From positions 7,068,001 through 7,132,000 of the forward strand of contig NW_026948187.1 in NCBI RefSeq assembly GCF_963921235.1: 64,000 bases of DNA. Reading direction: 5' to 3'. Position numbers and translations under genes: made by a program. Shown piece by piece: positions 6,546 to 34,714 of this stretch. The stretch comes from Mobula hypostoma. Lineage: Eukaryota. How positions within the stretch are numbered: the first letter of the stretch is position 1; every line of letters begins with the position of its first letter. The notes under the pieces were generated by a model. That model was not told the DNA's origin, did not search any database, and worked only from the letters and a program-made list of their open reading frames with translations.

Positions 6546-6899
6546 ACTTCCGGGTTTTCCACCCGGCACCTCTGGCACGAGCACTTCTTCCGAAGTGTGA
6601 AAATTCACCCAACTTAACACGCATGCATGATTAACCGGAACTTCCTCGGACTCACACGAGTCGTAAACTTCTCCTGGTCCGTCTCCGCACGAACTTAACG
6701 GGAGGTTTACACAGCTTCATTACGGTCTATTTTGCCTTCCTCCCTTCGTAAAGAGTGGTGTTACGTTTGTAATCTTTCAGCACTGCTGGACATGGCAAAA
6801 TCAAGTGATTCGTGAGAGAAGATGAACAATATATCTATTATCACTTCTGCATTCTCTCGCAGATCTCTCGGTGTAGTCTATCTGGCCCAGTTAACATTT

Positions 6900-9350: not shown

Positions 9351-9439
9351 GAACACTGTGACTGAACGCTGTTAGACAATTCGCTAGCCGACTGTTGGGA
9401 TTATTATTTACAACTCGAGTCTCCTTTTGTATCGCTTCT

Positions 9440-9600
9440 CTGACGGCCTGCAGGTAAAGGGTTAATTGCACCTGTCATTCCGTAGAAGTTAATGAAGGGA
9501 GTGTCTGTGGGGATTGTCGACGTCACCGCGGAGGCGTGGCTGCTGGTGGCCCGGTCTCTTAAAATGTCGCCCTCATAACGACAGTGTCAGTGAGAGCCGC
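9440..9600 (+). promoter_or_regulatory. Putative proximal promoter of GPCR paralogue 1
   Basis: A 22-nt block attgtcgacgtcaccgcggagg (CRE-like GACGTCA at 9519-9525) is identical to that of paralogue 2. An upstream E-box CACCTG and a TA-rich element (TTAAAA, 9559-9564) are also positionally conserved. Confidence 0.45.
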
Positions 9601-9685
9601 CAGTCCGCGCTATCAGAGACCAGCGGCTGCAGACAGAGAGAAGACAGAGGCTGCGTCGCGAACAGGAATCTGGACGATCGCAGCA

Positions 9686-9866
9686 ATGGATTATAACCTG
9701 CGAAGTGCTATGCCCAATGATACGGGAATCGCGAAGAATATTTTCTGGGCGTATCAAAGTCTTGTTGAATATTACGAATTGCTGACGTTGGACTATCGAA
9801 TCTATCTTGCGCTTGTGACATTCCAAGTGGTTTACTACCCGGTACTCGCAATTGTAGCTCTTCTTG
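9686..9866 (+). CDS. GPR139/GPR142-like class A GPCR, paralogue 1, coding exon 1 (N-terminus plus most of TM1)
   Basis: ATG at 9686 reads MDYNLRSAMPNDTG...VVYYPVLAIVALL, 181 nt (60 codons +1), followed by a GTAAGT donor at 9867. Has an N-glycosylation sequon (NDT). YYPVLA matches the GPR139-type TM1 start. The exon has the same length and phase as the paralogue at 31620. Confidence 0.9.
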
Positions 9867-10453
9867 GTAAGTGTCGGGTCTCATCCTCATCATTAGTGCT
9901 GAAAAATATAAGTCAGCTGCTCTTTCAAACCTGTGCTCTAACGACTAGCTAATTGCAAGTCAGGTATTTCCATCTGGTATCGCTTCAGCAAACATCGGCT
10001 GAGTGTATTTGATAATGCAAGGCTTATGGTGAAAGCAAGGAGGCATGTGATCCAAGTGGACATTGCTATGTGGATCCGGAAATGGCTTGCCCATTGAGGG
10101 CAAAGTGTTATTGTAGACATTCTGCATTGAAGTCGTTGACCAGCGGTTTGCTTCAGGGATCTCTTCTGGCACCCCTAATCTTCCTGATTTTTATAAATGA
10201 CATGGATGAGGAAGTGCAGCGATACGTTAATAAATGTGGTGATGAAAAAAAAGGTTGGGGGCGTTGTGGATAGTGTGGAAGGCTGTCAGATTTACAGCCG
10301 GACATTGATAGGATGCAAAATTGCGTTAAGAAGGGGCAGATGGAGTACAATATAGATCAGTGTGAGCTCGTTCTTTTAGGTAGCTAAATACGATGGCAGA
10401 ATATAGTATTAGCGGAATTGAATAAAGAAAGAAAGAAAGAAAGAAATAGATCC

Positions 10454-11249
10454 TGTCACGTGACCAACAACAAAGAAAATATAATTGAGTCAGTTTTTTA
10501 TTAACAAACAAACAAACATTTATTAAACTCTGCTCACCAATATCGAGAAGTATTCAAACGACTCACTTAACCGGAAGTTAACCGCGATACGGCAACTCTG
10601 GAACAGTTCTTAAAGTGGTAACTTCGAACACACTATTAAAACGGTTATTTCGGAATTCCAGTTGATTTATGCAGTCAATCAGGAGAGACTTCTCTGTAAA
10701 CGGATGTCTTCGAAGACGAGACGATACTGCTGATTCTGTCCACGGGATTCACGACGACAGAAATAAACTGGCTTAAATGAACTGACCTTGTCCTGGCGAA
10801 TGACACTGCACAAACCTTCCCTATCTTACAGGATATCTCAGATGCAGGTCACTGTTTCTGAACGAAGAATCACTGAGGTAGATCGTTTATAAAACTGCCT
10901 GAACGACACCAACTTTAATTGATCCTTCAGGCTCCCGTACGTTAGTAAGATCCTCACTCTCCAATACCAGAATTACAAAAGAAAGTAAACCTCCACTTTA
11001 AAATGAAACTGTGTCCTGAGACGAAGACGCAGCATAACGGAGTAAATGACGAATTACACAACAAATCAAACTGCGTAACAGCAGGGGTTTCCCGTTCTAT
11101 ACCTGTTGAGAACATGTCATCACATGACCTAGCACTGGCGGGAAAATTACATCACTGCACCATCACAAGACCATTACATCCTGCTCACAAGACACTCAGT
11201 TACATCATGGTCATCAGACAGTCACAGGATACCCACGAGGGATGTAACA
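10454..11249. mobile_element. Solo LTR-like insertion in the GPCR1 intron
   Basis: Begins TGTCACG, ends TGTAACA, is flanked by atcc/ctcc (near 4-bp TSD), and is absent from the homologous GPCR2 intron. Confidence 0.6.
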
Positions 11250-12476
11250 CTCCAACGTCTCACCAGTTAAAAAGCCTAAGGTTACGTGGGTATCATACCT
11301 CCAGGATCTATCGCCGACACAACGGCTGCAGAGGAAACTGATGGCATGCAGAGGGATATTAATATATTAATATAAGCGAACGTGACAGCTGGTAGGTGAA
11401 CGTGTCTCCACTGGTAGGTGAGAACAGAACTACGGGACATCGCCTGAGGATTCTGGGGATCAAACTTAGGACCGTGATGAGGATGAACTTTTTCTCTCAG
11501 AGGATGGTGAATCTGGGGAATTCTCTGCTCAGTGCAGCACTGGAACCTACTTCAATAAATATACTTACGACTGGCTGCCATTGATCTTGCATAGTAGACG
11601 AATTAAGGGCTATGAGGAAAAGGGAGGTATGCGGCGATGAGTCCATGGTCAGATCAGCCATGATCTTCTTCATTGTCAGATCATGCCAGTCCGAACAGAT
11701 GGACTATTCCTGCTCCTATTATTAATGTTCTTATGTCCTCACCTTCACTCCTCTTTACAGTTCAGGGCAGTTGAATTTCTGTCACACTGATACTTGGTAC
11801 ATTAATTCGTTCCTTGCTCTCTGAAGACTTCCCGTTTGCAACTCGTTCTCCTGGTGCAGAAGATCAGAATACGTTTCAGTAATCGGTTGCTGTCACTGCT
11901 TTGCTCATAAGGCTCAGAAGCTAAATTCGACCAGCCGAGCACAGAGCCTTCGCCGCCAATCCGTGTAGCTGATTCATTATCTCACTCAACCACATTCTGG
12001 CGCCCAGCACCGGAGCCAACGGCGACCTGATGAATCAAGCACCGATCACTCTCCTCTGCCAATGGTTCCAATGAACTGGCCCCAGAGCCGTCTGTGCCGA
12101 TGAATTCCACACATTCACCTGTCTCGGTCTGAAGAAATTACGGCCCATTTCCATTCTAAAGGAAAGTCTTTTTATTGTCAAGACTCGTCTTCAGGTTGTT
12201 GACTCCCCCACGACAGAAGCAACCCTCTCCACGTCCACGATATCTTGGCCTTTCAATGTTCAATAAGTTTCAATGAGACTCCTCTCATCCTTCTGAACTT
12301 CAGCAGGTACATTATAATCACTGCCAATTTAATAATGGATTCCGATAATGTCCTTCTTAGTTGCATGAAATCCATGTTCATCTCTGCAATTGAGAGTGCT
12401 ATCGATTACAATAATTGCTTTCAGAGAATGTGTCCATACAAATGTGTGTTGATCTTTTATATTTACGTCCGCACAG

Positions 12477-13402
12477 TGAACGTGGTGACAATCGTCATCC
12501 TGTCTCGGGGAAAGTGCGGTCTCTCCGAAGGCGTCACAAGGTACCTGGTTGCCATGGTAGCAGCGGATCAGCTCGTCGTTCTCTTCGACCTGGTATTGAG
12601 CAAGATTCCGGTGACTTACTGGCCAATAGAGTTTGTCAACTGGTCAGGTCGTCTTCGCGTGTGTAATATCCACGCCGTCCTGTTCTACACCGCCACGGAC
12701 TGTTCTGTCTGGTTCACCGTCACCTTCACCTTTGATCGGTTTGTCGCCATTTGTTTTCAGGAGCTGAAACGAAGATTCTGCACCGGGCGAGCGGCGGCTC
12801 TGGTTCTGGGGACAGTGACTGTGCTAATCTGCGTAAAGAACATATTCTGGTACTTTATGTTGGATGAGTTATTTTCATCACTAAATAGGTCCTTGATCTG
12901 CCTGACTAGTGACCGTCTATTTTCCCATTCTCAGCTGGCAACATTTCTACTGATTCATTTCCTCCTCACCCCAATATTCCCCTTTGTCCTGATACTCCTG
13001 CTCAATAGTTTAACCATCAGACACGTCTTCGTAGCCAGCCGAGCCCGGAGGAGACTCCGTGGTTCGCGGGTTGGCGAAACGGCCGCCGACCCGGAGATGA
13101 AGAATCGCAGGAAATCCCTTCTGTTACTGCTGGTTATGTCGGGGAATTTCATCCTGCTGTGGGCGCTGCTGACGGTGTGTTCCGTATGGGAGAGCCTGAT
13201 TTTTTACATTTACTCGATTCCCCCAGAGTCTCTGCGGGAGCTGGGCTACATGCTGCAGCTCCTCAGCTGCTGCACCAACACGGCCCTTTACGCCGTGGTC
13301 CAGGCCAGGTTCAGGGAGCAGCTGAAGGAGACGGTGAAATCGCCCTTACGTCTCATGGCAAAGTGCACTCGGCGTTGTCAGGATTGCATTAATGCTCGGT
13401 GA
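12477..13402 (+). CDS. GPR139/GPR142-like class A GPCR, paralogue 1, coding exon 2 (end of TM1 to C-terminus); spliced product 368 aa
   Basis: Acceptor ...gtccgcacAG at 12475-12476. The phase-1 join gives V-NVVTIVILSRGKCGLS. Motifs seen: AAD (TM2), VCNIH (C3.25), FDRF (DRY equivalent), FILLW (TM6) and CTNTALY (NPxxY equivalent). Stop TGA ends at 13402. 181+926=1107 nt, with no disruption. Confidence 0.92.
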
Positions 13403-13439
13403 CACTTCTCCCATACCGCCCAAGATATCCCATTTCATC

Positions 13440-16260
13440 ATACCATGAGACCATAAGACAAAGGGGCAGAAGTAGGCCATTGGGCCCATCGAGTCCGCTC
13501 CGCCATTGTATCATGAGCTGCTCCATTCTCCTATTTAGTCCCACTCCCCCGCCTTCTCACCATAACCTTTGAAGCCCTGGCTACTCAGATACCTATCAAT
13601 CTCTGCCTTAAATACACCCAATGACTTGACCTCCACTGCTGCCCGTGGCAACAAATTCCATAGATTCACCACCCTCTAACTAAAAAAAAATCTTCGCATT
13701 TCTGTTCGGAAAGGGCGCCTTTCAATCTTTAAGTCATGCCCTCTCGTACTAGACTCCCCCATCATGGGAAACAACTTTGCCACATCCACTCTGTCCATGC
13801 CTTTTAACATTCGAAATGTTTCTATGAGGTCTCCCCTCATTCTTTCAAACTCCAAGGAATACAGTCCAAGAGCGGACAAACTTTCCTCATACGTTAACCC
13901 TCTCATTCCCGGAATCGTTCTAGTGAATCTTCTCTGTACCCTATCCGAAGTCAGCACATCCTTTCTTAAATAAGGAGACCAAAATTGTGTATTTTACTTC
14001 AAGTGAGGTCTCACCAGCGCCTTATAGAGCCTCAAAATCACATCCCTGCTCCTATACTCTGTTCCTCCAGAAATGATTGCCGACATTGCAGTCACCTTCT
14101 TCACTATTGACTCAACCTGGAGGTTATCTTTAAGGGTATACTGTACGAGGTCTCCCAAGTCCCGTTACATCGCAGATCTTTGAATTCTATACTCATTTAA
14201 TTAATAGTCTGCCCGTTTATTTATTTCTGACAGGGCATAACTATACACTTTCCAACATTGTACCTCATTTGCAACTTCTCTGCCCATTCTTCCAATCTAT
14301 CCATGTCTCTCTGCAGACTCTCCGTTTCCTCAGCACTACCAACCCCTACACCTATCTTCGTATCGTCAGCAGACTTAGTCACAAAACCATCTATTCCATC
14401 ATTAAATCATTGATATGCATTGTAAAAAGAAGCGCTCCCAACACTGATCCCTGTGGAACACCACTGGTAACCGGTAGCCAACAGGAATAGGATCCGTTTA
14501 TTCCCACTCTCTGTTTCCTGCCAATCAGCCAACGCTCTATCAACGTAACTTTCCCATAATTCCATGGGCTCTTATCTTGTTACGTAGCCTCATGTGTGGC
14601 ACCTTGTCAAAGGCCTTTTGAAAATCCAAATATACAACATCCACTGCATCTCCCTTGTCTAGCCTACTGGTAATTTCCTCAAAACATTGTCATAGGTTTG
14701 TCAGGCAGGATTTTCCTTTAAGTAATCCATGCTGAGTTCTGCCTATCTTCTCATATGCCTCCAGGTACTCCATAACCTCATCCTTGACAATCGACTCCAA
14801 CAACTTCCCAAGCACCGTCGTCAAGCTAACAGGTCTATAATTTCATTTTTGCTTCCTTGCCCCCTTCTTAAATAGCGGAGTGACATTTGCAATGTTCCAG
14901 TCTTCCGGAACCATGCCAGAATCTATCGACTTCTGAGAGATCATCGCTAATGCCTCCGGAATCTCCACAGCTACTTCCTTCAGAACACGAGGGTGCATTC
15001 CATCTGGTCCGTAAGATTTATCTACCTTTAGCCTATTCAGCTTCCTGAGTAATTTCTCTGCGTAATTGTGACTGCGCACACTTCTCTTCCCTGCCACCCT
15101 TGAGTGTCCGGTATACTGCTCATGTCTTCCTCAGTGAAGATGATGCTAAATACTCGTTCAGTTCCTCTGCCATCTGCTTATCTCCCATTACAATTTCTCC
15201 AGCATCATTTTCCATTGGTCCTATATCTACTCTCACCTGTCTTTTACTCTTTATATACTTGAAAAAGCTTTTAGTATCCTCTTTGATATAATTTGCTAGC
15301 TTCCTTTCATAGTTAATCTTTTCTCTCTTAATTTTCTTCTTGGCTTCCTTTTGTCGGGTTCTACAATCTTCCCAATGCTCTGTTTCCCACTATTTTTTGG
15401 TTACTTGTATGCCCTCTCCTTTGTTTTAACTTTGGCTTTGACTTCTCTTGTCAACCATGGTTGCATCATTTTTCCACTCGTAAATGTCTTCTTTTTTGGA
15501 ATATACCTGTCTTGCATATTCTTCATTCCTCGCATAAACTCCAGCCATTGCTGTTCTGCTGTCTTTCCTGCCAGTGTCCCTTTCCAGTCAACTTTGGCCA
15601 GTTCCTCTCTCATGCCACTGTAATTTCCTTTACTCCATCAGATTTCGGTTTCTCTTTTTCTAATTTCAAAGTGAACTCAATCATGTTATGATCACTGCTT
15701 CCTAAGGGTTCCTTCACATCAATCTCTCTAATCACCTCCCGTTCATTACACAATATCCAATCTAGTACAGCCGATCCCCTGGTAGGCTCAACAACAAGCT
15801 GTTCTGAAAAGCCATCTCGCAGACATTCTACAAATTCTCTCTCTTGAGGTCCAGTGCTGACCTGATTTTCCCAGTGTACTCGCATGTTAAAATCCTACAC
15901 AATTATCATAACACTGCCCTTCTGACAAGCCTTTTCTATCTCCAGTCGTAATTTGTAGTCCACATCCCTGCAGCTGTTTGGAGGCCTATAAATAACTGCC
16001 ATAAGGGTCCTTTTACCCCTGCTATTTCTTAGCTCAACCCATAAAGATTCTGCACTTTCCGATCCTATATCACCTCTTTCTAAGGATTTAATATCAGTTT
16101 TTACCAATAAAGCCACGCCTCCCCCTCTGCCTACCCCCCCCCCCCTATCCTTCCGATACACCGTGTATCCTTGGTTGTTCAACTCCCAGAGACAGGCATA
16201 CTTTAGCTAGGTCTCAGTGATGGCCACAGTACCATACCTGCCAATCTATAGCTGCACAAC
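13440..16260 (-). mobile_element. CR1 LINE, decayed, ~2.8 kb, antisense, 3' end just after the GPCR1 stop codon
   Basis: Minus-strand fragments VYRPPNS, SDHN, KSYGPDGMHPRVLKEVA and RVQRRFTRTIPGM. The 3' tail appears as ccatgagaccataagac on the + strand. Confidence 0.9.
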
Positions 16261-20999: not shown

Positions 21000-22700
21000 G
21001 ATCGATTTCCACCTTGAATACCTGCACGGACTTGGACTCCACAGCAGTCTGTTCTGAAGGGTCGCGCCTCATTTGTGAGGTTGTGTCCTGCAGTGTTGGA
21101 TACCTTCACCAGAGGAAACATTCTTTCCACATCGATCCGATCTAGTCCTTTCATGTTCAATGGGTTTCAATGAGATCCTGCCGCATTCTTCTAAAATCCG
21201 GCGAGTACAGGCCCAAAGCTGTCAAACGCTCCTCATATGTTAACCCCTTCATTCCCCGAAATATCATCGTGAACCTCCTCTGGACTCTCACCAATAACAA
21301 CAAATTCCTTCCTGAAATACGTGCTACAAAACTGTTGGCAATACTCTCCATTGCGGCCTGACTAGAGTCTTACAATCTGTCAGCATTATCCCCTTGCTTT
21401 TATGTTCTATTCCCCTTGAAATAAATGCCAGCATTACATTTGCCTTCTTTACCACAAATGCAGCATGGAAATTAACCTTCTGAGTGTCTTGCACGAGGAC
21501 TCATGAGTCCTTCTGTACCGCTGATGTTTGAACCTTCTCCCCATTTGGATAATAGTCTGCTCTATTCTTCCTTTTACCAAAATGCATCATCATGAATTTT
21601 CCAGCACTAGATCCCATCTTCTACTTTTACCCCCATTCTTCCAATTTGTCTAAGTCTTGCTGCAAACTCATTGCTTCCTCAGCACTACCGACAGGACCCC
21701 ACCTATCTTCATTTCTTCTGCAAAGTTTGCCACAAAGCCATTATCCAAATCATGGATAAACAAAGGGAATAGTCGCTGACCCAATACTGACCCTGAGTAA
21801 CATCACTAACCACCGGCAGGCAAACACAAAAGCCTTCCTCTATTCCCACTCATTGCCTCTTGCCTATCAGCCATTCCTCTGTCCATTCCTGTATCTTTCC
21901 TGTAACGCCGGAGGATTTTATCTTGTTAAGCAGCCTGATATTTGGCACCTTCTCAAAAACCTTCNNNNNNNNNNNNNNNNNNNNNNNNNNNNNNNNNNNN
22001 NNNNNNNNNNNNNNNNNNNNNNNNNNNNNNNNNNNNNNNNNNNNNNNNNNNNNNNNNNNNNNNNNNNNNNNNNNNNNNNNNNNNNNNNNNNNNNNNNNNN
22101 NNNNNNNNNGTGACGGCGCTTTGTTTGTTTGTTTATTTATTTGTTTGTTTGTTTATGTATTTATTTATTTTTATCGGCAGGCTTTCCAATATTTACGAGG
22201 TCGAGGTGCTGGTTCGACGCTCAACCGGGAACTGATGGAAAGCGTTCAGGGGTTCTGGCTGAATTTGAACTCGATAGCCCTCGCTTCGTCGTCTGGCGCT
22301 GATGCCACTGAGCTACACGCTGGCAAAATGACATCCACTGCCTCACCTTTATCACCCCCCACCAACGGCCCCTCCCCCCTCCCCCCCCCCGCCCCCCGGT
22401 TCTCACTTTTTCGAAGAACTCTGACAGATTGGTCAGGCTAGATTTCCATTCACAGGAACACCTCTGACTTTGACTTGTTTTATCATTAGTCTCCAAGTAC
22501 GTCGCAATATCATCCTTAGCAATTGACTCCAACACTTCCTCAGTCAGATTAAGCTAACTGGCCTAACATTTCCATTCGCTTGCCTTCATCCGTTCGAAAA
22601 GAGTGTAGTCGCATTTGTAATCTTCCAGACTACCGAGATAAGCCAGAATCAAGAGATTTTTGGAAAGCAGATGACCAATATATCCATTAACTGTTCAGGG
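21000..22700 (-). mobile_element. Decayed antisense CR1 fragments spanning an assembly gap
   Basis: Minus-strand RVQRRFT...GLTYEERL and ETNDKTSQSQ...KSSLTNL remnants. Confidence 0.7.
21965..22109. other. Assembly gap (145 N)
   Basis: Run of N. Confidence 1.
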
Positions 22701-23959
22701 CTCTGAGATGTAGTCCGTTTGTCCGAAGAGATTTATCCGCCATAACACCTTTGTGTGTGCCGAACACTTTTTCATCTGTAATAAGGTTTGCACTCACTCC
22801 CATTCCCTGCTACTCTCGGGACTCTGGCACCCTGATAATACCGTCCACAGCAAACACATACGCAAAGAACCTGTCAGGTTCATAGGACATTATATTCGAA
22901 AGCAAAGAACCTTAGTTTTCAATTGTTACATTTCCTGTGCCCCCATTTCTGGATAAGAAAAATATACCGACTTCTTACGACCAAATTATCAATAATTCGA
23001 TTGGGACCATTTGGGGAATAGTGCCCATAATTGCAGAAGCGTTAACATCGTTACAGGTTCTGATAAGACTGGTCTTCACGGGAGAGTGCTGAGTCGGCCG
23101 AATGCCGAATAATAATGCTTTGGGCAGGAGCTGGGTAAACTTCATTTATAATCGCCGTCGGGTCAAGTCCACACATGACATGTGGATATCTCATAATAGC
23201 GATCTCAGTAACAGCATGTTTTTTTTTCTGAGGATGAAGCTAAGTGTGAAGCAAGACAAGGCAATGTTCGAGAAGATAAATGTTTCGAACCATTTCAGAT
23301 ATGGACGGGAGAAATAAATTATGCATGATGTTTAGTCATCCTATATCGATCCAGACATGCGGAGGTTATGAAACAAACCGCGAATGTTGAAACAAGCGAT
23401 ATTGAGAAGGAAAATGTGGTGCAAATGGGGAGCGACGAGAACGGTGGGCATTTTAAGGAAGAAAACAGGTTATCTGGAGAGAAGAAGTTCGGACATTTTT
23501 TGATAAAAGTCCATCACATCGGCGATCACCACGGAAACAGATACACTGTAGGATAAAATCTGTTGGCGAAGGATATTATTGGGTTACGATGATACTGTGA
23601 CAAAAGAGTTGAGCCGCTTGTGTTAGTATCCCGCTGCACCATATTCTGGCCTTTTTCTCCACCATCCAGGTGTTTCCACTGAACGTCCTGTTAACCCCTC
23701 CAACTGCTCAATCCCCTGTAACAACTCCTCTCACCGTTCCTTTCTGAGCCACCGCGTTGGACTCGGTGCCGGAGACAGGGCTGCTGTTGCATTCCCACGG
23801 TCGTTAGTCCCGCCAACGATATCCAAGTCGGTACACCTGTTCTTGATGGGAACGACCACAGAGCGGCTGTTCACTCCTCTTCTTCCCTCTCCTGTCGTTC
23901 ACGCCGATACCTGCCACCTGCAACTGAGCAGTTACACCTCATTCTCCCGTAAAGAGCCG

Positions 23960-26900
23960 AATGCCACAAACCTGCCACTTCAGAATAAAACATAAAAAGG
24001 ATTATTTCCTTGAACCGTTACAGATTGTCAGATTGTAGGAAGCAGTGGCTGTCTCTAAATCGTAGCGGAATGTTGGTCGCATTTCCGGACTGAATGTCCA
24101 AGGCTACACGTTGTATCGGAGGGACAGGAAGGTTTGCAGAGTGGCTAGCGTGGCTGTGCAGGTGGAGAATGGCATCAGCTCACCAGTGAGATGTGACATA
24201 GGATCGTAAGCCGTGGAATCATTGTGGGTTGTGATAAGAAAGTGACAGGGCAAAAGGACCCTCATAGGAATTGTATACAGGCCTCCCGACAGTAGCTGGA
24301 ATACAGACCACAGATTTCAACGGGAAAATGTGTGCCGAAAGGACAATATTATGATAGTTACGGCATTATCAACATGCAGCTCGATTGGCTTGGCGTCTTT
24401 TTTACAGTTCTTGCTTCAGCTGACTTTTGGATCAGCTCTTACGCATTGGGTGCTATGAAATGAATCGGAAATTATTAGGGAGCTTAAGGTAAACGAATTA
24501 TTAGGAAGCAGTGATCACAATATAACTGAGTTCAATTTGAAATATGATAAGGAAAATTAAAGTCTGACGCGGCTGTATTTCAGTTGGGTGAAGGGAAATA
24601 CAATGGTGTGAGAAAAGTATTGGCCAAATAAAATTTGGAGGATTTGCTGCCAGAATTATCTGCAGGGCAGAAGGGCGGTGAGTTTCAGGTAAAACAGAGG
24701 AACGTGCAGAATACATGCATTCTAATATTAAAGAAATACTCAGATGTCAAAACTACACAATCGTGGAAAAGCTAAAGGCAAAAGAGAAGGCATATAACAA
24801 GCAAATACTAATGGGAAAACGGAGTATTGGGAAGCTTTTGAAAACCTACAGAGATCAACTGACAGAATCGTTAGAAGGGAAAAAGAAGAAATACGAAAGC
24901 ATGCTAGGAAACAATATCAAGTTGGGTAGCGAATTCGTTTATAAATTCACATAAAGCAAAGGGAAATGAGCGTGCATATAGGACCGCTAGGAAATGAGGC
25001 AGCAGAAATAATAACGGGGGACAAGGAGATGGCCGATGAACTCTGATGAAGTAAATGAGTATTTTGCATCAATCGTCACTGTGGAAGATACCGGCAGTTT
25101 GTCTGATACTGTAGTGTGTGAAGGAGAGATGTGGGTGCGGTTATTCTTGCAAGAGAGAAGGTACTCAGAAAGCTGACTGATCTAAGTGTACATAAGTCAC
25201 CCGGACCAGATAAACTCCACATTAGGGTTGTTAACGAGTGAGCGGGAGAGACTGCGGAAGCATTAGCGATGGTCTTTATGAAATTTGTGGACTCTCGCCT
25301 GGTGCCAGAAAACGGAAAAGTTGCAAATACTACTTCACTCTTTAGGAAAGGAGGGAGATAACAGAAAGGGAGTTATACACCTGCTAGCCTGACCTTACTG
25401 GTCTAGATGTTAGATTCAATTGTTAAAGGTAAGGTAACAAAGGACAGGAGAGGACAAAGTAAGCACATCCCTCTGCTGTCTCTCCTAGTATCTTGCGCAG
25501 ATATCATCAGACCCAACGGACTGACCAATCTCAGCAATTTGTCACAATCTTGTTTGGAACAACCTGCTGGATTTCCTTGAGGAGAATATATGCAGGATAG
25601 CTACAGTGGGTGTAGTGGATGTTGTGTATTTGGATTTTCAAAAGATCTTTGACAAGGTGCCACACAAGAGGCTGCTTATGAAATTAAGAGTCCAGGGTAT
25701 TACAAGAAATACCATGAGCATTGGTTGAACGTTAGGAGCAAGCGAGCGAGAATTAATTGATCCGTTTCTGTTTGGCTGGCAGTGACTCGTGGTGCTCCGA
25801 ACGTGTCAGTGTGGGGAACAATTTTTTAGGCTCTATGTCAATGATATAGATGATGGAATTTAAGTTTTTGTTGCTAAGTTTGCAGATGGTCTAAATATGG
25901 GGTGTCGGGGCAGGTACAGCTGCCGAATGATGCAACTTGCAGAGCACCTCAGACAGATTTGGAGAATTGGCAAGAAAGTGGCAAGTGAAAAAATACACTG
26001 TTGGTAAGTGCATGCTCATGCTCTTCGGTAGAAGAAATATATTTGCAGATTACTTGCGAATCGTGGAGACAATCTATAAATTAACATTTAAGAATAAATT
26101 GGACAGATACATGGATGTGGGGTGTATGGGGGGATATGGTCCATGTGCAGGTCAGTGGGACGAGGCAGAAAATGGTTCGGCACAGCCAAGAAGGGCCAAA
26201 GGGCCTGTTTCTGTGCTGTAGTTTCTATGGTTTCTATAAATTGCGGTGCAAAGGGAATTCGGAGTCCTTGTGCAGAACACCTGAAGGGGTAACATGCAGG
26301 TCGAGTCGGAGGTAAGGCAGGAAACTATACTGTTAACATTCATTTCAAGCGGTCTAGTATACAGGGACAGTGATGCGATACTGAGACTTTACAAGGCAGT
26401 GATGAAGCCTCAGTGTGACAATTATGAACAGTTTTCGGATCCTCATCAAACAAAGACGCGCTGGCATTGCCGAGGGGCCCGGAGGAATCACAAACATGAT
26501 TCCAGGGATTAAAGGGTTATCATGTTAGTACTGTTTCTCTGCTCTGGGTCTGTACGCGACGGAACTGCAGACGGATGAGGTGGGATCCCATTTCAACCTT
26601 TCGAATGTTGAAAATCCAAGGCAGATGGATGTGGAAAGGATGTTTCCCAAAGCTGGGGTGTCTGAGACAAGAGGGTGCAGCCTCAGAATAGAGAGGCGTC
26701 CATTTGAAACAGAGAAACTGAGAATTTTCTTTCGCCAGAGGCTGGGGAATTTGGGGAATTTGTTACCACATTCAGCTGTGGTGGACATGTCCTTGCGTTT
26801 ATTTAAGCCAGAGATTTATTGGTTGTTGATTGGACGCAGCATTGAACGTTACGGGGAGAAGGCCGGAGAATGGCGGTGAGGATGGGAAGTAAAAGATCAG

Positions 26901-26980
26901 CCATGATTGAGCAGACGCGATGACCTAATTCAGTTCCTATATATGCTGGTCTTATGTTCCTGTGGCCTTAAATCAGTGAG
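23960..26980 (+). mobile_element. Old decayed CR1 LINE
   Basis: Degenerate APE and RT segments in order, ending in a ggtcttatgttcc tail. Confidence 0.75.
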
Positions 26981-28800
26981 AGTTACGGACATTTTTTAAA
27001 ATCAGTTTTTACTTGCGCTCGGTGCCACGTTCATTAGATGCAAATGCCTGGGAGATGCAGGGAACTGATCGAAACTATGTAGAGAGAAAACGTTCATTGC
27101 TGCTGTCAAGTGCCAATGAATACTCTAGTCCCGCGACATCGAGCGCTTATTCATGTCAAGAGATGCTCTCTGCTGTGATGAGTGTCGCCAGGATTTTGTG
27201 TGTGATTCTGTTCTAGGCTCAAAATTCAAAGCACAATGATTATCAAAGTACTATAATGCCCCGTCTCATACATTTACCGGCATGTTTTATGTATTTCATT
27301 TTGCAGTTCTGTAAGAGCAGTCTGTTCTGCCGGCAACATGTTTGGGTTACTGTTGAAGATAATAATTGTGTGCTCTGGAATTGGTATGGTAGATTGAGGA
27401 GGTGCTTTTCTTGGCGAGGGACACTAAGGTTGGTTTTGTTTGTTTGTTTTTTTTTGGTTCGGCGGGAGATATGGAAAGAGGACGCATGGAGAACAGACCG
27501 TAGGATTTAATCGGGTGGGAGACCCATTTCTTCGAGATGGATTGCGAGCGAATTTCGGAAGGTGTTATGTGGCCTAGTGACCAGCACGCGAGAGCCAAAG
27601 AAGTTCAAGGTTAGCTCCAACCTCTGCATATTTGACCCTTTAATTAGAGTGGGCTTTCTTCCGTTTGTTCCTCCTTGCTAACTCCTTAATTCAGTAAAAG
27701 ATTCATAAATATAATCCTTTTATAACCATATAACCACATAACAATTACAGCAAGGAAACAGGCCATCTCGGCCCTTCTAGTCTGTGCCGAGCTCTAACTC
27801 TCACCTAGTCTCACCGAACTACCCTCAGCCCATAATCCTCCATTCCTTTCCTGTCCATACATGTATCCAATTCTCCTTTAAACGACAACATCGAATGTGC
27901 TTCGACTACTTCTGCAGAAGCTCGTTCCACACAACTCTCACTCTCTGTGTAAAGAAGGTCCCCCTCGCTTCCCCCAATTTTTTGCCATTTAACTCTCAAG
28001 TCATTTACTCTTGTTTGAATCTCCCCCTTCTCAATGGAGAAAGCATATCCACGTCAACTCTATCAACCCCCCTCATAATTTAAAACACCTCTATCAGGTC
28101 CCCCCCTCGTCCTTCTGCGCTCCACAGAATAAAGACCTAACTAGTTCAACCTTTCTCTGTAACAGCAGAAGAAACCCAAACAGCATTTTAGTAAATCTCC
28201 TCAGTACTCTGTCAATTTTATTGACATCTTTCCAATAATTCGGTGACCAGCACTGTACACAATTCTCTAAATCTGGCCTTACCAGTACCTTATACAACTT
28301 CAACATGACATCTCAACTCCTGTACTCAATGCTCTGATTAATAAAGGCCAGCATACCAAAAGCATCTTCACCACTCTATCCACATGACATTCCACATTTA
28401 GGGAACTATGCACCATTATTCCTAGATCCCTCTGTTCTACAGCATTCTTCAATACGCTACCATTTACCATGCATGTCCGACTTTGATTAGTCCTCCCAAA
28501 ATGTAGCACCTCACATTGTTCAGCATTAAACACCATCTGCCATCTTTCAGCCCACTCTTCTGTCTGGTCTAAATCTCTCTGAAAGCTTTGAAAACCTACT
28601 TCATTATCCACAATTGTATGCTGTCTGTTATTTCATGGTACTGATTTGTAACACGGTGGCAAATTATACAGCACAAAACCAAACGGAGCGGAATCACCAC
28701 ATATACGTTTCGACATACTACTGTATGACGTAGTCCATATTCTTGCGAGGATACTCCAGAAATTCTTCATAGAATAATAATCATCTTTACAGTAGAGGAG
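25636..28800. repeat. Paralogous block B (matches ~43571-45605); this copy carries an extra antisense CR1 3' end at ~27720-28620
   Basis: Shared decayed CR1 with the same lesions, plus non-TE flanks (26990-27720 vs 44690-45425; 28620-28780 vs 45440-45605). Confidence 0.85.
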
Positions 28801-29495
28801 GCCGTGGATAGACATGTCGGAATGGGAATGGGATGTGGAATTAAAATGTGTGCTCCCGCCTCCATCACCCTCCCGGAGCATCCTCTGCTTTCAGCAGGGA
28901 TCGCTAGCTACGCGACTCCCTTGTCCATTCGACGCCCTTCCCACTGATCTCCCTCCTGGCACATATCCTTGTAAGCGGAACAAGTGCTACACATGCCCTT
29001 ACACCTCCTCTCTTACCACCATTCCGGTCCCAAGACAGTCCTTCCAGGTTAGTCGGCTGGGGTGATATACTGCGTCCGGTGCTCCCGATGTGGCCTTCTA
29101 TATATTGGCGAGTTCCGACGCAGATTGGGAGATCGTTTTGCTGAACAACTGCGCTCTGTCCGCCAGAGAAAGCAGGATCTCCCAGTGGCCACATATTTTA
29201 ATTCCACATCCCATTCCCATTCCGACATGTCTATCCACGGCCGGCTCTACTGTAAAGATGAAGCCACACTCAGGTTGGAGGAACAACTTGCATGAACATT
29301 GACTTCTCTAACTTCCGCTAATGCCCCACCTCCCCCTCGTACCCCATCCGTTATTTATTTACATACACACATTCTTTCTTTCACTCTCCTTTGTCTCCCT
29401 CTGTCCCTCTGACTATACCCCTTCCCCATCCTCTGGTACCCCGCGCCCCCCCCCCCCCACCAACTTTTCCTTCTCCCTGGGCCTCCTGTCCCATG
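28781..29495 (+). mobile_element. Penelope-like element 3' portion (GIY-YIG endonuclease) with a short inverted copy at its 5' side
   Basis: VIYCVRCSRCGLLYIGE...RLGDRFAE...FNSTSHSHSDMSIHG is a PLE GIY-YIG domain. 28781-28851 is the reverse complement of 29190-29261. Confidence 0.85.
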
Positions 29496-29497
29496 AT

Positions 29498-30535
29498 GTA
29501 ACGGAACAGAGGTTGGTAGATGAACAGGAAGTGTCACAGCTGGAGGTGACAATTGGCATCCCATCTCTCTCTAAAAATTTGTGGAACCCATTCAAAGCTG
29601 GTCCGTGGACCTAGAGCGCTCTCTACAGTCGCTGTTGACAGAACACTCACCAAACGCACGTTTAATCAATGAGAATGATTTTTATATGAATTCTTTAGTA
29701 CTGAGTTTCCACTGCACACTCTGTTGACCTGCGTAGGAGAGGAGACTGGAATCCGGCAGGCTGGTGGGGATCTCAACGGACCAGAGAATGTAGAAGTTAG
29801 AGCACCACAGCACATGAACTGGCCCTCTGATCCGAGGTTTGAGTCACAGAAAAGTAGGGCTCAGAAACAAACACTTCGGCCTATCCAGCTGTGCCGAAAT
29901 ATTTAAACTGCCTAATTTCATTGACCAACACCAGGAGAAAATGCCCTCCTTACTTCTGCCCTAGATGTACCAAAAGACCTTCTCTGAAACTGGATATCGA
30001 AATCTCATGCACCATTTGGGCTCGCTGCTCCTTCCACGTCTTCTGACTAAAGACGTTTCCTCTCATGTTCCCCTTCAACCTTTCAACTTTCACCCTCGGC
30101 CCATTTCTTCTCATTGCCAAATCCAGCCTTTGTGTAATAGGCTGCTTGCATTTACGCGAGCTATCGCCCTCATACTGGGGCAGGTGACGCTCGTCAGCCT
30201 CGGACCGCAGCCCGCCAAGGAGAAGGAAAACTCTGATTTTATACCTCCGCTGCCTTCCGGCCATACGCACCGACGGGAAAGACATCGGGAGTAAGCCCCG
30301 AGGAAGAAATCCGGAGTCGGTGTCTCTAAGGAAGTTTGATGCTGTTTACAACTTGACTCCTGCAGCCTCTACGGAAACAGTGCTGTCAAGCTGCAGCGGC
30401 GCTTGTCCTTCCCTTGGACGGCATCAGTGACGTGAAGAAGCCGGTGCATGGACAACAGCCGGTTCTTCAAATCTTTCCGCCCAGGCTTTTGCCCTGGAGT
30501 GGATGCAGTTCACCAGAGACGCGAACCAGTGATCT
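29498..30535. repeat. Paralogous block C (matches 53144-54183)
   Basis: Both begin gtaacggaacagaggttg and end ccagagacgcga.cca.tgatct. They share long identical runs such as gagtcacagaaaagtagggctcagaaacaaac and gtcagcctcggaccgcagcccgccaaggagaaggaaaactctgat. Confidence 0.9.
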
Positions 30536-31379
30536 AACCCCCTCGCTATATGTCCTGTGTATCACCAGTTCAGCCTTCCGAATGACCTGCAGCTGCACCT
30601 CCTGAACGCGGATTGTCTGAAGTTGCAGCTGAACGCAGTTCTCTCAGCTGTCGTCGTCAGGGTTACTGGAGTTCTCTGTCCCTTCTCAGATCTCAGTTAT
30701 CCTGCCTGGCATCTCTGTTATCCTATCTGATCAGATATAAAGAAGGGAAGGAAAATAAAACGTTTTAACCCAGTGCTTTCCTTTATTTTCTTTTCTTTGC
30801 CTACTTTGACTGAAGCCTCCCTGAGCTGACGCCTCGGCGAGCAGAAGTCTGAAGATCTCCTGCTTCACGGTCCATTCAGACGATGGCTGCTGCATTTGCC
30901 CCTGGTGTTGTCTTGCAGATCAACGACAACCGCCGCCGGGTCTCTGGCCAAAGCTGGTTTTCACTTTAAGGACCTTCTGCCGCCGTTTATACCCGTGTTG
31001 ATTGACGTCTTTTCCTCCTAAATCACCCGAAGGCCAGATTGTCCGCTGTTCAAAACTCCTTTTCTGAAAATCTTTATTTTGGAATTATCTAACTCGATAA
31101 CATTTTCAATCAACCTATGCAACTATAATTTTAAGAACTATCGGTGCAATAATTATTTAAACCCGTTTATAGCAGTATTATGGTTTGTTTTATTTATATG
31201 TTTTGATTTGTGCGTCTACCGTCCTTTCCAGACTGGCTGGATATCAGTGTCCAGCTGCGTAACCATAAGTTTCTCAATGTTCTGTCAATTTACAGACACG
31301 GCACGCATCCATGGACAGCCGACTGCTGGGATTATTAGATACACTTCCAATCTGCTTTTGTATCTCTTCTCTGACGGTC

Positions 31380-31530
31380 TGCAAATAAAGAGTTAACTGC
31401 ACCTGGCATTCCGTAGAACCTGATTAAGGGTGTGTCCGTGGGAATTGTCGACGTCACCGCGGAGGTGTGGCTGCTGGTTGCCTGGTCTATTAATATGTAC
31501 GGTATCCCTCACAACGACAGTTACAGTGAG
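31380..31530 (+). promoter_or_regulatory. Putative proximal promoter of GPCR paralogue 2
   Basis: Same 22-nt block (GACGTCA at 31450-31456), CACCTG E-box, and TATTAATA at 31488-31495, about 125 nt upstream of the ATG. Confidence 0.45.
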
Positions 31531-31619
31531 AGCACCAGTCTACGCTGTCAGAGACCAGCGGCTGCAGACAGAGAGAAGACAGAGGCTGGATCGGGAACAG
31601 GAACGTGACTATCCCAGCA

Positions 31620-31800
31620 ATGGATCATAATCTGCTAAATATATCGCGGAATGCTACGGGAATTGCAAAGAATATTGTCGGGGCGATTCAATATTATGTT
31701 GAAAATTACGAATGGCTGACGTTGGACTCACGAATCAGCGTTGTGCTTGAGATATTCAGAATGGTTTACTACCCTGTACTCGCGATTATCGCTATTCCTG
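31620..31800 (+). CDS. GPR139/GPR142-like GPCR, paralogue 2, coding exon 1
   Basis: ATG at 31620 reads MDHNLLNISRNATG...VYYPVLAIIAIP, 181 nt, with a GTAAGT donor at 31801. Sequons NIS and NAT are present. Confidence 0.9.
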
Positions 31801-32084
31801 GTAAGTGTCTCGTCTCTTCCTCACGATTAACATTAAAAAAAAACATAAGTCAGTTTCTCTTTCATAACTGTCCTCTCACGGGTCGCTAACTGCAGTGTTG
31901 GTCTTTCCACCCGGTATGGTTTCAGCAAACATCGGCTGAGTGTATTTGATAAGGTAGCCCATGCATGGCTTATTGTGAGAGTAAAGAGGCGCGTGATCCA
32001 AGGGGACATTGCTATGCGGATCGAGAAATAGCTTGTCCACTGAAGGCAAAGTGTTGCTGAAGACGGTCATATTCTGCATAGAAA

Positions 32085-32590
32085 CATAGAAACATAGAAA
32101 ATAGGTGCAGGAGTAGGCCATTCGGCCCTTCGAGCCTCAACCGCCATTCAGTATGATCATATCCAACTCAGAACCCCGTACCTGCCTTCTCACCATCTCC
32201 CCGATCGCTTTAGCTACAAGGACAATATCCAACTCCCTCTTAAATATAGCCAATGAACTGACCTCAACTGTTTCCAGTGGCAGAGAATTCCACAGATTCA
32301 CGATTCTCTGTGTGAAGAAGTTTTTGCTAATCTCGGTCCTAAAAGGCTTCAATTTTATCCTAAAACTGTGACCAGTCGTTCTGGACTTCCCCAACATCGG
32401 GAACAATCTTCCTACATCTAGCCTGTCCAATCCCCTTAGAATTTTATGCGTTTCAATAAGACCCCCTCAGTCTTCTAAATTCCAAAGAGTGTCAGCCTCG
32501 TCGATCCAGTCTGTCATTATCTGAAAGTCCCGCCACCCAGGAATCAATCTGCTCAACTTTCTTTGAACCCCCTCTATGGCAAACATTGAG
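32085..32590 (-). mobile_element. CR1 3' end inserted in the GPCR2 intron
   Basis: catagaaacatagaaacatagaaaataggtgcaggagtaggcc is the reverse complement of the tail of the intact CR1. Absent from the GPCR1 intron. Confidence 0.85.
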
Positions 32591-33788
32591 GTCTTGGACT
32601 AGTGGTGTGCCTCAGGGATGAGTTTTGGCACCCCTACTCTTCGTGATTTTTATAAATGACCTGGATGAGGAAGTGGAGCGATGGGTTAGTAGCTTTGCTG
32701 ATGAGGCAAAGGTTGGAGGTGTTGTGGATAGTCTGGAGTGTTGTCAGAGGTTTCAGCGGGACATTGATAGGATGAAAAACTGCGCTAAGAAGAGGAAGAT
32801 GGAGTTCAACACAGATAAGTGTAAGGTCGTTCATTTCGTAGGTTAAATATGATGGCAGAATATAGTATCAACGGAATTAAATAAGTAAATAAGTAGCTCT
32901 AACTTTAAAAAAAAAGTTTTTAAAAAAGGACATGAGGTCACGTGGGCATCATCACTGCCATGATTCATCGCCGACTCCAACACTGCAGAGGAAACTGACA
33001 GCATGTAGAGGGATATTAATATGTTCAGCGAATGTACCAGCGTCTGGCAGATGCAGTGTAAAGTTCGGAATGCGAGGTCATCCACTTCGGGTGGTCATAT
33101 AGAAGAACAGAATACAATTTAAGTGGTAAACGATTGCACAACGCTGCTGTTCCGAGGCACTTTGTACTGCTTGTGCTTGAATCACAAAAGGTCAGTTTAC
33201 AGGAGCAACAGGCTATCAAGAAGGCAAATGGGATGTTCGCCTTTGCTGCCAGACGGATTGCATTTCAGTGAACGGCCGTGATGTTGCCACTACGGAAGGT
33301 ACTGCTGAGACGGTATCTGGAGTACTCTGCAGTTCTGGTCTCCCGGCCTGAGGAAATGGTTCACTCTCCTCTGCAAATGTTTCTAATGAACTGGCCCTCA
33401 TTACCGCCTGTGGCGATGAACTCCACACATTAACCAGCCTCTAGGTAAATAAATGTCTCCCCATCTCTGTTCCAAGGGGATGTCTCCCGATTGTGAAACC
33501 TCGTCTTCAGTTGAAGACTCCCCATTACAGAAACTACGCTCTGCACGTCCACTGTAACAAGGCCACTCAATGCTCGATATGCTATAATGAGATTCCCCTC
33601 ATTCTCCTGAACTACAGCAGCTATATTATAATCACTACCGATTTGATAATGGCTCCCGGTAATCTACTTCGTAGATTCATAAATTCCAATCAATCTATGG
33701 TCTAGGAAGTGCTATCGATTAGAATGTTATTTTCAAAGAATGTTTCCATCCAAATGTGTGTTAATGGTCTTTATTTCCCTCCGCACAG

Positions 33789-34714
33789 CGAACGTAGTGA
33801 CAATTGTGATCTTGTCGCGGGGGAAGTGCGGTCTCTCCGAAGGCGTCACAAGGTACCTGGTTGCCATGGAAGCAGCGGATCAGCTCGTCGTTCTCTTCGA
33901 TCTGGTATTGAGCAAGATTCCGATGATTTACTGGCCAATGGAGGTTTTCTTCTGGTCGAATCGCTTTCCCGTGTGTAATATCCACGCCGCCTTGCTCTAC
34001 GCCGCCACGGACTGTCCTGTCTGGTTCACCGTCACTTTCTCCTTTGATCGATTGGTCGCCATTTGTTCTCAGAAGCTGAAACGAAGATACTGCACCGGGA
34101 GAGCGGCTGCGCTGGTTCTGGGGACAGTGACTGTGCTGAGCTGCGTAAAGAACATATTCTGGTACTTTATGGTCGAAGGGACATATTCGATGTTAATTAC
34201 GTCCTTGCTCTGTCTGAGTGGAAATGCTTTCTTTTCCCAATCTCAGGAGGCAACATTTGAACTGATTCATTTCCTACTCACCCCAACATTCCCCTTTCTC
34301 TTGATTCTCCTGCTCAACAGCTTAACCATCAGGCATGTCTTCGTAGCCAGCCGAGCCCGGAGGAGACTCCATGGTTGGCGCGAAGGCGAGACGCCCGCCG
34401 ACCCGGAGATGAAGAACCGCCGGAAATCCCTCCTGTTACTGCTGGTGATGTCGGGGAATTTCATCCTGCTGTGGGCGCTGCTGACGGTGTATTCCGTATG
34501 GGATAGCCTGTATTATTCCTTATACGTGATACCCCCGAATTCTCTGCGGGAGCTGGGCTACATGCTACAACTACTGAGCTGCTGCACCAACACGGCCCTT
34601 TACGCCGTGGTCCAGGCCAGGTTCAGGGTTCAGCTGAAGGAGACGGTTAAGTATCCCTTAAGACTCCTGTCAAAGTTCACTAGGCGTTGTCATGACCGAA
34701 TTAATCCTCAGTGA
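33789..34714 (+). CDS. GPR139/GPR142-like GPCR, paralogue 2, coding exon 2; spliced product 368 aa
   Basis: Acceptor ...ctccgcacAG at 33787-33788. The phase-1 join gives A-NVVTIVILSRGKCGLS. 926 nt, open to TGA at 34714, and colinear with paralogue 1 with no net length change. Confidence 0.92.

What the first reader, a model, noticed from the sequence alone, without database searches (positions are those of the whole stretch)
9686..34714. The two GPCR paralogues differ mainly on the ligand-facing side
Seen: the N-terminus, ECL1 (VTYWPIEFVNWSGRLR vs MIYWPMEVFFWSNRFP), ECL2/TM5 top (LDELFSSLNRSLICLTSDRLFSHSQLA vs VEGTYSMLITSLLCLSGNAFFSQSQEA) and TM6-ECL3 (CSVWESLIFYIYSIPPE vs YSVWDSLYYSLYVIPPN) are heavily substituted. 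ICL1 (NVVTIVILSRGKCGLSEGVTRYLVAM), much of ICL3 (DPEMKNRRKSLLLLLVMSGNFILLWALLTV) and TM7-H8 (SLRELGYMLQLLSCCTNTALYAVVQARFR) are identical. Established: mammalian GPR139 and GPR142 respond to aromatic amino acids, and chondrichthyan genome annotations contain many GPR139-like copies. Inference: a receptor repertoire diversifying in ligand specificity on a fixed signalling chassis, like a chemosensory or immune-sensing family outside the OR/TAAR/V1R/V2R classes.
Basis: partly seen in the sequence, partly recalled or inferred. Interest (0 to 1): 0.78.

Follow-up and report, generated by a model that had tools for sequence, protein, structure and literature searches.

The report
Tandem GPR139-like receptor pair, devil ray
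Two intact neighbouring receptor genes from a very large shark-and-ray family differ mostly on their outward-facing side, but that side changes at about the neutral rate, so selection for new ligands is not shown.

Summary
The window carries two intact, two-exon, 368-aa class-A GPCR genes: A at 9686-9866 + 12477-13402, B at 31620-31800 + 33789-34714. They align without gaps and are 76.6% identical. 60 of 86 replacements lie in the extracellular half (P=4e-5). The assembly gap is intergenic.

Gene conversion does not explain the conserved tracts. dS is 0.25 outside versus 0.28 inside, and both match intron divergence (0.22-0.31).

Positive selection is not shown. dN/dS is about 0.9-1.1 in the loops (CI 0.5-1.9), 0.83-1.3 in the outer half and 0.26 in the inner half. 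In a replicate set of seven young paralogues from Heptranchias perlo, the outer parts have dN/dS 0.40-0.42, significantly below 1.

Across the 122 sequences aligned, the variable parts are the N-terminus, outer TM1, ECL1-3 and the C-tail. The deep transmembrane pocket is nearly fixed (D2.57, H3.28, T3.36, D3.37, E5.42, Q7.42).

The family is annotated "probable GPR139" but lacks GPR139's agonist-contact residues. I found no paper describing it. The scan already noted this family many times on other DNA of this genome.

Verdict: real and moderately interesting. The "diversifying repertoire" reading is only partly supported.

The parts
9686..9866 (+). Copy A exon 1: ATG, extracellular N-terminus (N-glycosylation sequon at N11) and most of TM1. 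Ends in a phase-1 donor G|GTAAGT.
12477..13402 (+). Copy A exon 2: acceptor CACAG|TG, then end of TM1 through TM7, helix 8, C-tail and stop codon.
   Evidence: Pfam 7tm_1 E=6e-18
31620..31800 (+). Copy B exon 1, collinear with A exon 1 and with the same donor.
33789..34714 (+). Copy B exon 2, ending in the stop codon.
   Evidence: Pfam 7tm_1 E=8e-16
6732..13436 (+). A-side of the old segmental duplication: upstream DNA, exon 1, intron, exon 2 and 34 bp of 3' flank. Homology ends where a LINE fragment begins at 13442.
   Evidence: non-coding K80 0.16-0.32
22580..34749 (+). B-side of the duplication. It is collinear with the A-side but holds about 6.2 kb of extra repeat DNA (25122-31317) upstream of exon 1.
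9511..9653 (+). Promoter-proximal or 5'UTR region of A with two blocks almost identical in B. Block 1, about 9513-9547, has a CRE-like GACGTCA core and one mismatch. Block 2, 9613-9653, is a perfect 41-mer also found at B 31548-31588.
   Evidence: upstream K80 0.16 versus 0.22-0.31 in the intron. Not found in the skate locus L001.
21965..22109 (.). Assembly gap. It is intergenic between A and B and is not part of either gene.

Best explanation
A and B are an old tandem duplicate pair. They belong to a very large, elasmobranch-expanded family of rhodopsin-class GPCRs that databases label 'probable GPR139' but that is only a distant relative of GPR139.

Both genes are intact and kept by purifying selection. 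The constraint is very uneven:
- The cytoplasmic half (ICL1, inner TM halves, the DRF motif, the TM6 base, NTxxY and helix 8) and the deep transmembrane pocket are held almost fixed. The likely reason is that all members share one transducer and one activation core.
- The N-terminus, outer TM1, ECL1-3, the pocket rim and the C-tail drift at about the neutral rate.

So the pair's outward-facing difference is mainly differential constraint. That may well carry differences in ligand selectivity. The best candidates are A's loss of the family-conserved W5.38 and E5.42, where A has L214 and L218 and B has E214 and E218. Selection for new specificities is not demonstrated.

Shown: the gene models, the asymmetry, uniform dS, no detectable conversion, dN/dS values, and family-wide site rates.
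Inferred: a shared G-protein partner, ligand binding at the rim and loops, and any sensory role.
For: - Intact two-exon genes with canonical splice sites. The same phase-1 intron is present in seven Heptranchias perlo paralogues.
- Whole-gene dN/dS is 0.52-0.64. The inner half is 0.23-0.37, the outer half 0.83-1.29 and the loops 0.89-1.10.
- dS does not differ between the halves (P=0.77) and equals intron and flank K80 of 0.16-0.32.
- The scan for a low-dS tract is not significant.
- H. perlo replicate: loops 0.40, outer TM 0.42, inner 0.23.
- Family site rates are high only in the N-terminus, outer TM1, ECL1-3 and the C-tail. Outer TM2, TM3 and TM4 rates are 0.25-0.36.
- Canonical pocket positions are nearly invariant in the 122 sequences aligned.
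- A and B each deviate at 10 of 127 positions that are at least 90% conserved, so neither looks more decayed than the other.
- A has a 98.7%-identical orthologue in Mobula hypostoma that keeps A's pocket states.
- The nearest solved structure is GPR139, at only 22-25% identity.
Against: - A region-wide dN/dS near 1 in the Mobula pair could be a mix of strongly selected and constrained sites. A two-sequence test cannot separate them.
- ECL2 sites just after the conserved Cys (205, 207) changed in three of four independent contrasts. The pair also differs by two charged residues at classic ligand-contact positions on TM5. Both fit adaptive tuning.
- The 122-sequence family sample is the set most similar to copy A, so conservation of the pocket may be overstated.
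- The pocket positions were assigned by generic numbering, not from model coordinates.
Confidence: 0.7

Rival explanations
1. One reading: positive diversifying selection drives the extracellular and pocket-rim differences. On this view the family is a ligand-diverse sensory or immune-sensing repertoire on a fixed signalling chassis.
For: - The outside/inside asymmetry holds in the pair and in the family.
- The ML and YN00 point estimates for the outer half are 1.18-1.29.
- ECL2 sites change recurrently.
- A and B differ as L versus E at 5.38 and 5.42.
- The expansion is very large: all 120 listed hits have E below 5e-96, and all come from sharks and rays.
- The known olfactory class-A families are tiny in a shark (PMC11979771).
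Against: - No estimate is significantly above 1. The CI for the loops is 0.50-1.93.
- The H. perlo replicate gives 0.40-0.42, significantly below 1.
- Deep-pocket residues are conserved, unlike the variable TM3/5/6 pocket residues described for odorant receptors (my own knowledge; for this family).
- Extracellular parts of membrane proteins generally evolve faster (established knowledge), so the asymmetry alone is not diagnostic.
- There are no expression or ligand data.
Confidence: 0.2
2. The identical tracts (TM1 end through TM2, TM6, TM7 and helix 8) are kept alike by gene conversion between the tandem copies, not by protein-level constraint.
For: - Codons 75-114 hold 1 synonymous difference where 6.4 are expected.
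- The longest identical nucleotide run is 52 nt in TM7-H8 (P=0.026 under a uniform null).
- ECL2 has a higher dS than the rest of the gene in all four contrasts.
Against: - dS in the inner half is 0.28, the same as intron divergence and as the outer half.
- The low-dS window is not significant after scanning (P=0.24).
- The 52-nt run lies where non-synonymous sites are constrained, so the uniform null is too strict.
- The other identical tracts have window dS of about 0.2-0.5.
Confidence: 0.03
3. One copy, more likely B, has lost function. It is drifting and has simply not yet acquired a stop codon.
For: - B carries changes at family-conserved core sites: S137P, T145S, F149L (DRF to DRL), R255H, and a Glu in TM2 (V88E).
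- No near-identical orthologue of B is in the protein database, while A has one.
- B's upstream region took in about 6 kb of repeats.
Against: - A and B deviate equally, at 10 of 127 conserved positions each.
- Inner-half dN/dS is 0.26.
- There is no stop codon and no indel in 1104 nt at dS about 0.27, while the non-coding alignments carry gaps.
- The splice sites and the upstream blocks are retained in B.
- B's TM5 pocket states (E5.38, E5.42) are shared with the M. birostris relative P0003.
Confidence: 0.07

Closest known systems
GPR139 / GPR142 (vertebrate class-A orphan receptors that respond to aromatic amino acids)
   Same: - GPR139 is the best sequence match (7vug, E=3e-6) and the best Foldseek match among solved structures.
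- In the alignment both share W3.41.
- Both have an N-x-x-x-Y motif in TM7 without the proline.
- Both have an RFR motif in helix 8.
- Both have acidic residues in the outer parts of TM2 and TM3.
   Different: - Identity is only 22-25%. The GPR139 match is barely better than LPA6, PAF, opioid or somatostatin receptors.
- GPR139's agonist contacts are not kept. E3.32 is L or F here, R6.51 is L or F, the Asn at 7x38 is Y or F, and D2.61 is S or R.
- P6.50 is absent.
- GPR139 is described as highly conserved across vertebrates (PMC12208981 abstract). This family has at least 120 clusters at 90% identity in sharks and rays.
Vertebrate class-A chemoreceptor repertoires (OR, TAAR, ORA/V1R)
   Same: - Large lineage-specific expansion with tandem copies.
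- A conserved cytoplasmic face across paralogues.
- Faster change on the outside.
- A conserved polar anchor set in the pocket recalls the fixed D3.32 of TAARs (the resemblance is from my own knowledge).
   Different: - The coding region is split by an intron; OR and TAAR coding regions are generally described as intronless (my own knowledge).
- The deep TM pocket is conserved rather than hypervariable.
- No dN/dS above 1 was found.
- No expression data are available.
Peptide and chemokine-type class-A receptors (opioid, somatostatin, neurotensin, chemerin GPR1, CX3CR1)
   Same: - Fold similarity is nearly as good as to GPR139.
- Variation is concentrated in the N-terminus and extracellular loops, which are the main specificity determinants in such receptors (established knowledge).
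   Different: - There is no detectable specific sequence kinship.
- The family is far larger than any such receptor group.
- No ligands are known.

Membership tests
Rhodopsin-class (class A) GPCR, Pfam 7tm_1 | Seven-helix fold and a match to the 7tm_1 profile above the curated cut-off | tested here: met
   65.7 and 58.7 bits against a cut-off of 30.5. The AF2 model has seven TM helices plus helix 8, pTM 0.73. At least 500 GPCR structures match.
Rhodopsin-class (class A) GPCR, Pfam 7tm_1 | Conserved anchors: N1.50, D2.50, the C3.25-C45.50 pair, W6.48 | tested here: met
   N62, D91, C123, C202 and W289 are invariant or nearly so in the family alignment and are present in both A and B.
Rhodopsin-class (class A) GPCR, Pfam 7tm_1 | Canonical E/DRY, CWxP and NPxxY micro-switch motifs | tested here: not met
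   The motifs are variants. DRF in A and DRL in B replace DRY. L-W-A-L has no P6.50. N-T-A-L-Y has no P7.50. These are variants within class A, not a reason to exclude membership.
GPR139/GPR142 subfamily | Clearly closest to GPR139/142 among characterised receptors | tested here: inconclusive
   GPR139 is the top hit by sequence and by fold, but only marginally: E 2.8e-6 versus 3e-6 for LPA6, and 3.1e-7 versus 5.2e-7 for SSTR2.
GPR139/GPR142 subfamily | Agonist-contact residues of GPR139 (E3.32, R6.51, N at 7x38, D2.61; PMC12775434) | tested here: not met
   The aligned positions are F/L130, L292, Y318 and S102 in A/B, and L, F, F and R in the family majority.
GPR139/GPR142 subfamily | Activation by L-Trp / L-Phe | not testable with these tools
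   Needs a cell assay. The pharmacology of GPR139 is taken from the PMC5218887 abstract.
Chemosensory receptor repertoire (OR/TAAR-like behaviour) | Large lineage-specific expansion in tandem arrays | tested here: met
   1924 hits in all. All 120 listed have E below 5e-96 and come from sharks and rays. The window holds a tandem pair. Seven 85-96% identical copies, six of them located on one H. perlo chromosome record.
Chemosensory receptor repertoire (OR/TAAR-like behaviour) | Hypervariable ligand-pocket residues inside the TM bundle | tested here: not met
   32 canonical pocket positions have mean site rate 0.57, against 0.73 for other outer-TM sites (P=0.13). Many are held by at least 110 of the 122 sequences aligned. 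Only the rim (45.51, 6.58, 7.32) and the loops are variable.
Chemosensory receptor repertoire (OR/TAAR-like behaviour) | Positive selection at ligand-contact sites | tested here: inconclusive
   Region-level dN/dS is about 1 in the Mobula pair and 0.40-0.42 in H. perlo.
Chemosensory receptor repertoire (OR/TAAR-like behaviour) | Expression in sensory cells | not testable with these tools

The most novel reading that the evidence does not exclude
The family is the overlooked class-A chemoreceptor repertoire of sharks and rays, which have only a handful of OR, TAAR and ORA genes. A fixed acidic/polar pocket core (D2.57, H3.28, D3.37, E5.42, E7.36, Q7.42) would anchor a common ligand moiety. The variable rim, ECL2 and N-terminus would tune selectivity. 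On this view A and B are two differently tuned sensors, since A has replaced W5.38 and E5.42.
Probability: 0.2. Interest if true: 0.85.

Novelty: new variant of a known kind. Interest (0 to 1): 0.45.

Why it matters
Elasmobranchs have very small OR, TAAR and ORA repertoires (PMC11979771). A class-A family with at least 120 distinct (90%-identity) clusters across sharks and rays, found in no paper I could search, would be a candidate for an unrecognised sensory or ligand-diverse receptor system.

This report gives the first codon-level check I know of for that idea. The asymmetry is real and is not caused by conversion. It looks like uneven constraint rather than demonstrable diversifying selection, and the deep pocket is conserved. 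That narrows what to test: the rim and ECL2 sites, and the TM5 positions 5.38 and 5.42. It also tempers the repeated claim that the whole pocket is hypervariable.

Tried and rejected
- **DNA from close relatives.** I tried to fetch DNA of the closest relatives (P0001 and P0002 of M. hypostoma, P0003 of M. birostris, P0006 of Hypanus) for a proper multi-species codon test. No DNA was available because the sample files were too large. I used the remaining look-ups on a Heptranchias perlo array instead.
- **Per-branch counts.** I did not try another route and used phylogenetically independent pairs instead. It is biased by tree shape and I give it little weight.
- **Gene conversion as the cause of the identical tracts.** Rejected.
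- **One copy decaying.** Not supported.
- **The two upstream conserved blocks as a family-wide promoter box.** They are not detectable in the skate locus L001. The 41-nt perfect block is only borderline by my rough hand estimate of chance (P about 0.07, not a tool result). I left this as a lead.
- **Literature.** Searches pairing GPR139 (or 'coupled receptor 139') with shark, cartilaginous, elasmobranch, skate or ray terms, plus 'GPR139-like', found nothing on this family.
- **Family size.** I ran no further search on the family's size. The number of genes per genome was not measured here.


Full report
**What is there.** Two long ORFs on the + strand (12245-13402 and 33740-34714) are the only receptor-like sequences in the 64-kb window (tblastn). 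Each is the second exon of a two-exon gene.

| Copy | Exon 1 | Exon 2 | Product |
|---|---|---|---|
| A | 9686-9866 | 12477-13402 | 368 aa |
| B | 31620-31800 | 33789-34714 | 368 aa |

- Exon 1 carries the ATG, the N-terminus and most of TM1. It ends in a phase-1 donor, G|GTAAGT.
- Exon 2 starts after the acceptor CACAG|.
- The two spliced products align without any gap. 282 of 368 residues are identical, and 167 of 1104 nucleotides differ.
- The genes sit in an old segmental duplication, A-side 6732-13436 and B-side 22580-34749. Repeat insertions interrupt it, including about 6.2 kb upstream of B's exon 1.
- The assembly gap at 21965-22109 lies between the genes, 8.6 kb after A's stop and 9.5 kb before B's ATG, next to repeat copies. 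No exon depends on what it hides.

**Identity.** Both products match Pfam 7tm_1.
- The best solved relative is GPR139. The match is weak (E=3e-6, 22-25% identity) and barely ahead of LPA6, PAF, opioid and somatostatin receptors.
- A large protein search returned 1924 hits. All 120 listed have E below 5e-96. All come from sharks and rays (Mobula, Hypanus, Narcine, Leucoraja, Rhinoraja, Heptranchias, Heterodontus, Pristiophorus, Scyliorhinus), and all but one, an unnamed Logan sequence, are named 'probable GPR139'.
- Copy A has a 98.7%-identical orthologue in Mobula hypostoma (P0001). B's nearest relatives are only 77-78% identical.
- The window therefore comes from a Mobula-like ray other than the annotated M. 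hypostoma assembly.
- GPR139's agonist contacts (E3.32, R6.51, N at 7x38, D2.61; PMC12775434) are replaced here by L/F, L/F, Y/F and S/R. The database name does not imply GPR139 pharmacology.

**The observation.** I took the topology from an AlphaFold model of P0006, a collinear 368-aa homologue (pLDDT 81, pTM 0.73). I split each helix at its middle using the conserved x.50 anchors.
- 60 of 185 residues differ on the extracellular side and 26 of 183 on the intracellular side (P=4e-5).
- N-glycosylation sequons fall only in predicted extracellular segments: A at N11, N115 and N197; B at N7 and N11.

**Gene conversion.** Synonymous divergence does not differ between the halves (0.253 vs 0.280, P=0.77).
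- It matches the divergence of the aligned intron and flanks (K80 0.16-0.32).
- The identical peptide tracts have ordinary window dS of about 0.2-0.5.
- The one exception is TM2. Codons 75-114 show 1 synonymous difference against 6.4 expected. That is not significant once the scan is accounted for (P=0.24).
- Conversion is therefore not the reason for the conserved tracts.

**Selection in the Mobula pair.** dN/dS by region:

| Region | dN/dS | Source |
|---|---|---|
| Whole gene | 0.52-0.64 | |
| Inner half | 0.23-0.37 | |
| Outer half | 0.83-1.29 | |
| N-terminus plus loops | 0.89-1.10 | |

- Bootstrap intervals are 0.53-1.35 for the outer half and 0.50-1.93 for the loops.
- The outward-facing part therefore changes at a rate indistinguishable from neutral.

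**Selection in a replicate set.** I rebuilt the coding sequences of seven young paralogues (85-96% identical) of Heptranchias perlo.
- They have the same intron position and splice motifs.
- I summed three phylogenetically independent pairs chosen on a bootstrap tree.
- Loops give 0.40 (CI 0.20-0.79), outer TM halves 0.42 (0.24-0.77) and the inner half 0.23 (0.12-0.40).
A few selected sites cannot be excluded.

**Family pattern.** On 122 sequences (copies A and B plus the 120 listed hits), IQ-TREE site rates are 1.08 outside and 0.43 inside (P=7e-18).
- The sites at which A and B differ are the fast sites of the family (1.35 vs 0.57).
- The fast segments are the N-terminus (1.70), outer TM1 (1.29), ECL1 (1.20), ECL2 (1.60), ECL3 (1.60) and the C-tail (1.34).
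- The outer halves of TM2, TM3 and TM4 are slow (0.25-0.36).
- Canonical pocket positions are largely fixed out of 122 sequences: D2.57 120, H3.28 119, T3.36 119, D3.37 119, L3.32 110, W5.38 104, E5.42 107, E7.36 112, Q7.42 120, W6.48 122.
- Their mean rate (0.57) is not above that of other outer-helix sites.
- What varies is the rim (45.51, 6.58, 7.32) and the loops. ECL2 residues 205 and 207 changed in three of four independent contrasts.
- A and B differ at 7 of 32 pocket positions. The most notable are L versus E at 5.38 and at 5.42. A has lost the family's W5.38 and E5.42, and its M. hypostoma orthologue shares A's residues.
- Neither copy looks degenerate. Each deviates at 10 of 127 strongly conserved positions.

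**Reading.** The pair shows strong, shared constraint on the signalling face and on a polar pocket core. The loops, N-terminus and rim evolve nearly freely.
- This agrees with the descriptive part of 'variable outside on a fixed chassis'.
- It does not agree with the claim that diversification is driven by selection for ligand specificity.
- It does not agree with an odorant-receptor-like hypervariable pocket.
- Faster evolution of the outward-facing parts of membrane proteins is a general tendency (established knowledge). The asymmetry alone does not indicate a sensory role.

**Literature and earlier scan notes.**
- Seven searches found no paper on this family.
- A recent catshark sensory-genomics paper lists only small OR, TAAR, TARL and ORA repertoires and does not mention GPR139 (zero occurrences).
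- The scan has already noted this family 27 times on other DNA of the same genome.
- My results agree with those notes on the family's size and on its distance from GPR139.
- They qualify the repeated statement that the ligand pocket is hypervariable.

**Limits.**
- Only two sequences from the window could be compared at codon level, because DNA of the nearest Mobula relatives was not retrievable.
- Site models and ancestral-state counts were not available.
- The membrane halves and pocket positions rest on generic numbering and on a predicted secondary structure, not on model coordinates.

Noticed in passing
window 189-212 in A/B residue numbering (ECL2; A nt about 12860-12931); also L002-L008: ECL2 has raised synonymous as well as raised amino-acid divergence. 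dS is 0.55 against 0.27 gene-wide in Mobula, and 0.36 against about 0.10 in H. perlo. Among codons with identical amino acids, 13/63 differ synonymously in ECL2 against 97/1078 elsewhere (P=0.006), with the same direction in all four contrasts. This is a post hoc observation and the cause is unknown.
   Followed up: partly
window 1-3429 and 15055-18490: Two direct copies of a 3.4-kb segment are 98.8% identical and bracket gene A. The first is cut by the window start. They are far younger than the A/B duplication.
   Followed up: no
window 57034-60033 (+); fragments at 13442-15108, 40215-41889, 46000-47276, 58838-60130: An open 999-aa LINE ORF2 with endonuclease and reverse-transcriptase domains. 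Diverged copies of overlapping repeat DNA are scattered through the window. One starts 40 bp after A's stop codon and marks the 3' end of A/B homology.
   Followed up: partly
window 9513-9547 and 9613-9653; B 31444-31478 and 31548-31588: Two near-identical blocks lie 30-170 bp upstream of both ATGs. The first has a CRE-like GACGTCA core and the second is a perfect 41-mer. The upstream 300 bp is less diverged (K80 0.16) than the intron. They were not detected in the skate locus. They may relate to the promoter box noted earlier in the scan.
   Followed up: partly
window 25122-31317: About 6.2 kb of extra DNA lies in B's upstream region relative to A. It is made of repeats also present at 43940-45429 and 53144-54183.
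   Followed up: no
L001 1077-1289 (-) and 6022-6234 (+): In the little-skate locus a second exon-1-like segment lies on the opposite strand about 4.7 kb upstream of the queried gene's exon 1. This suggests a head-to-head neighbour of the same family.
   Followed up: no
L002-L008: All seven H. perlo paralogues share the donor G|GTAAGT and an acceptor ending ACAG|TT at the position of the Mobula intron. The two-exon structure therefore predates the shark-ray split.
   Followed up: yes
window 38850-38978, 62422-62674, 63071-63228: Three further assembly gaps lie outside the finding.
   Followed up: no
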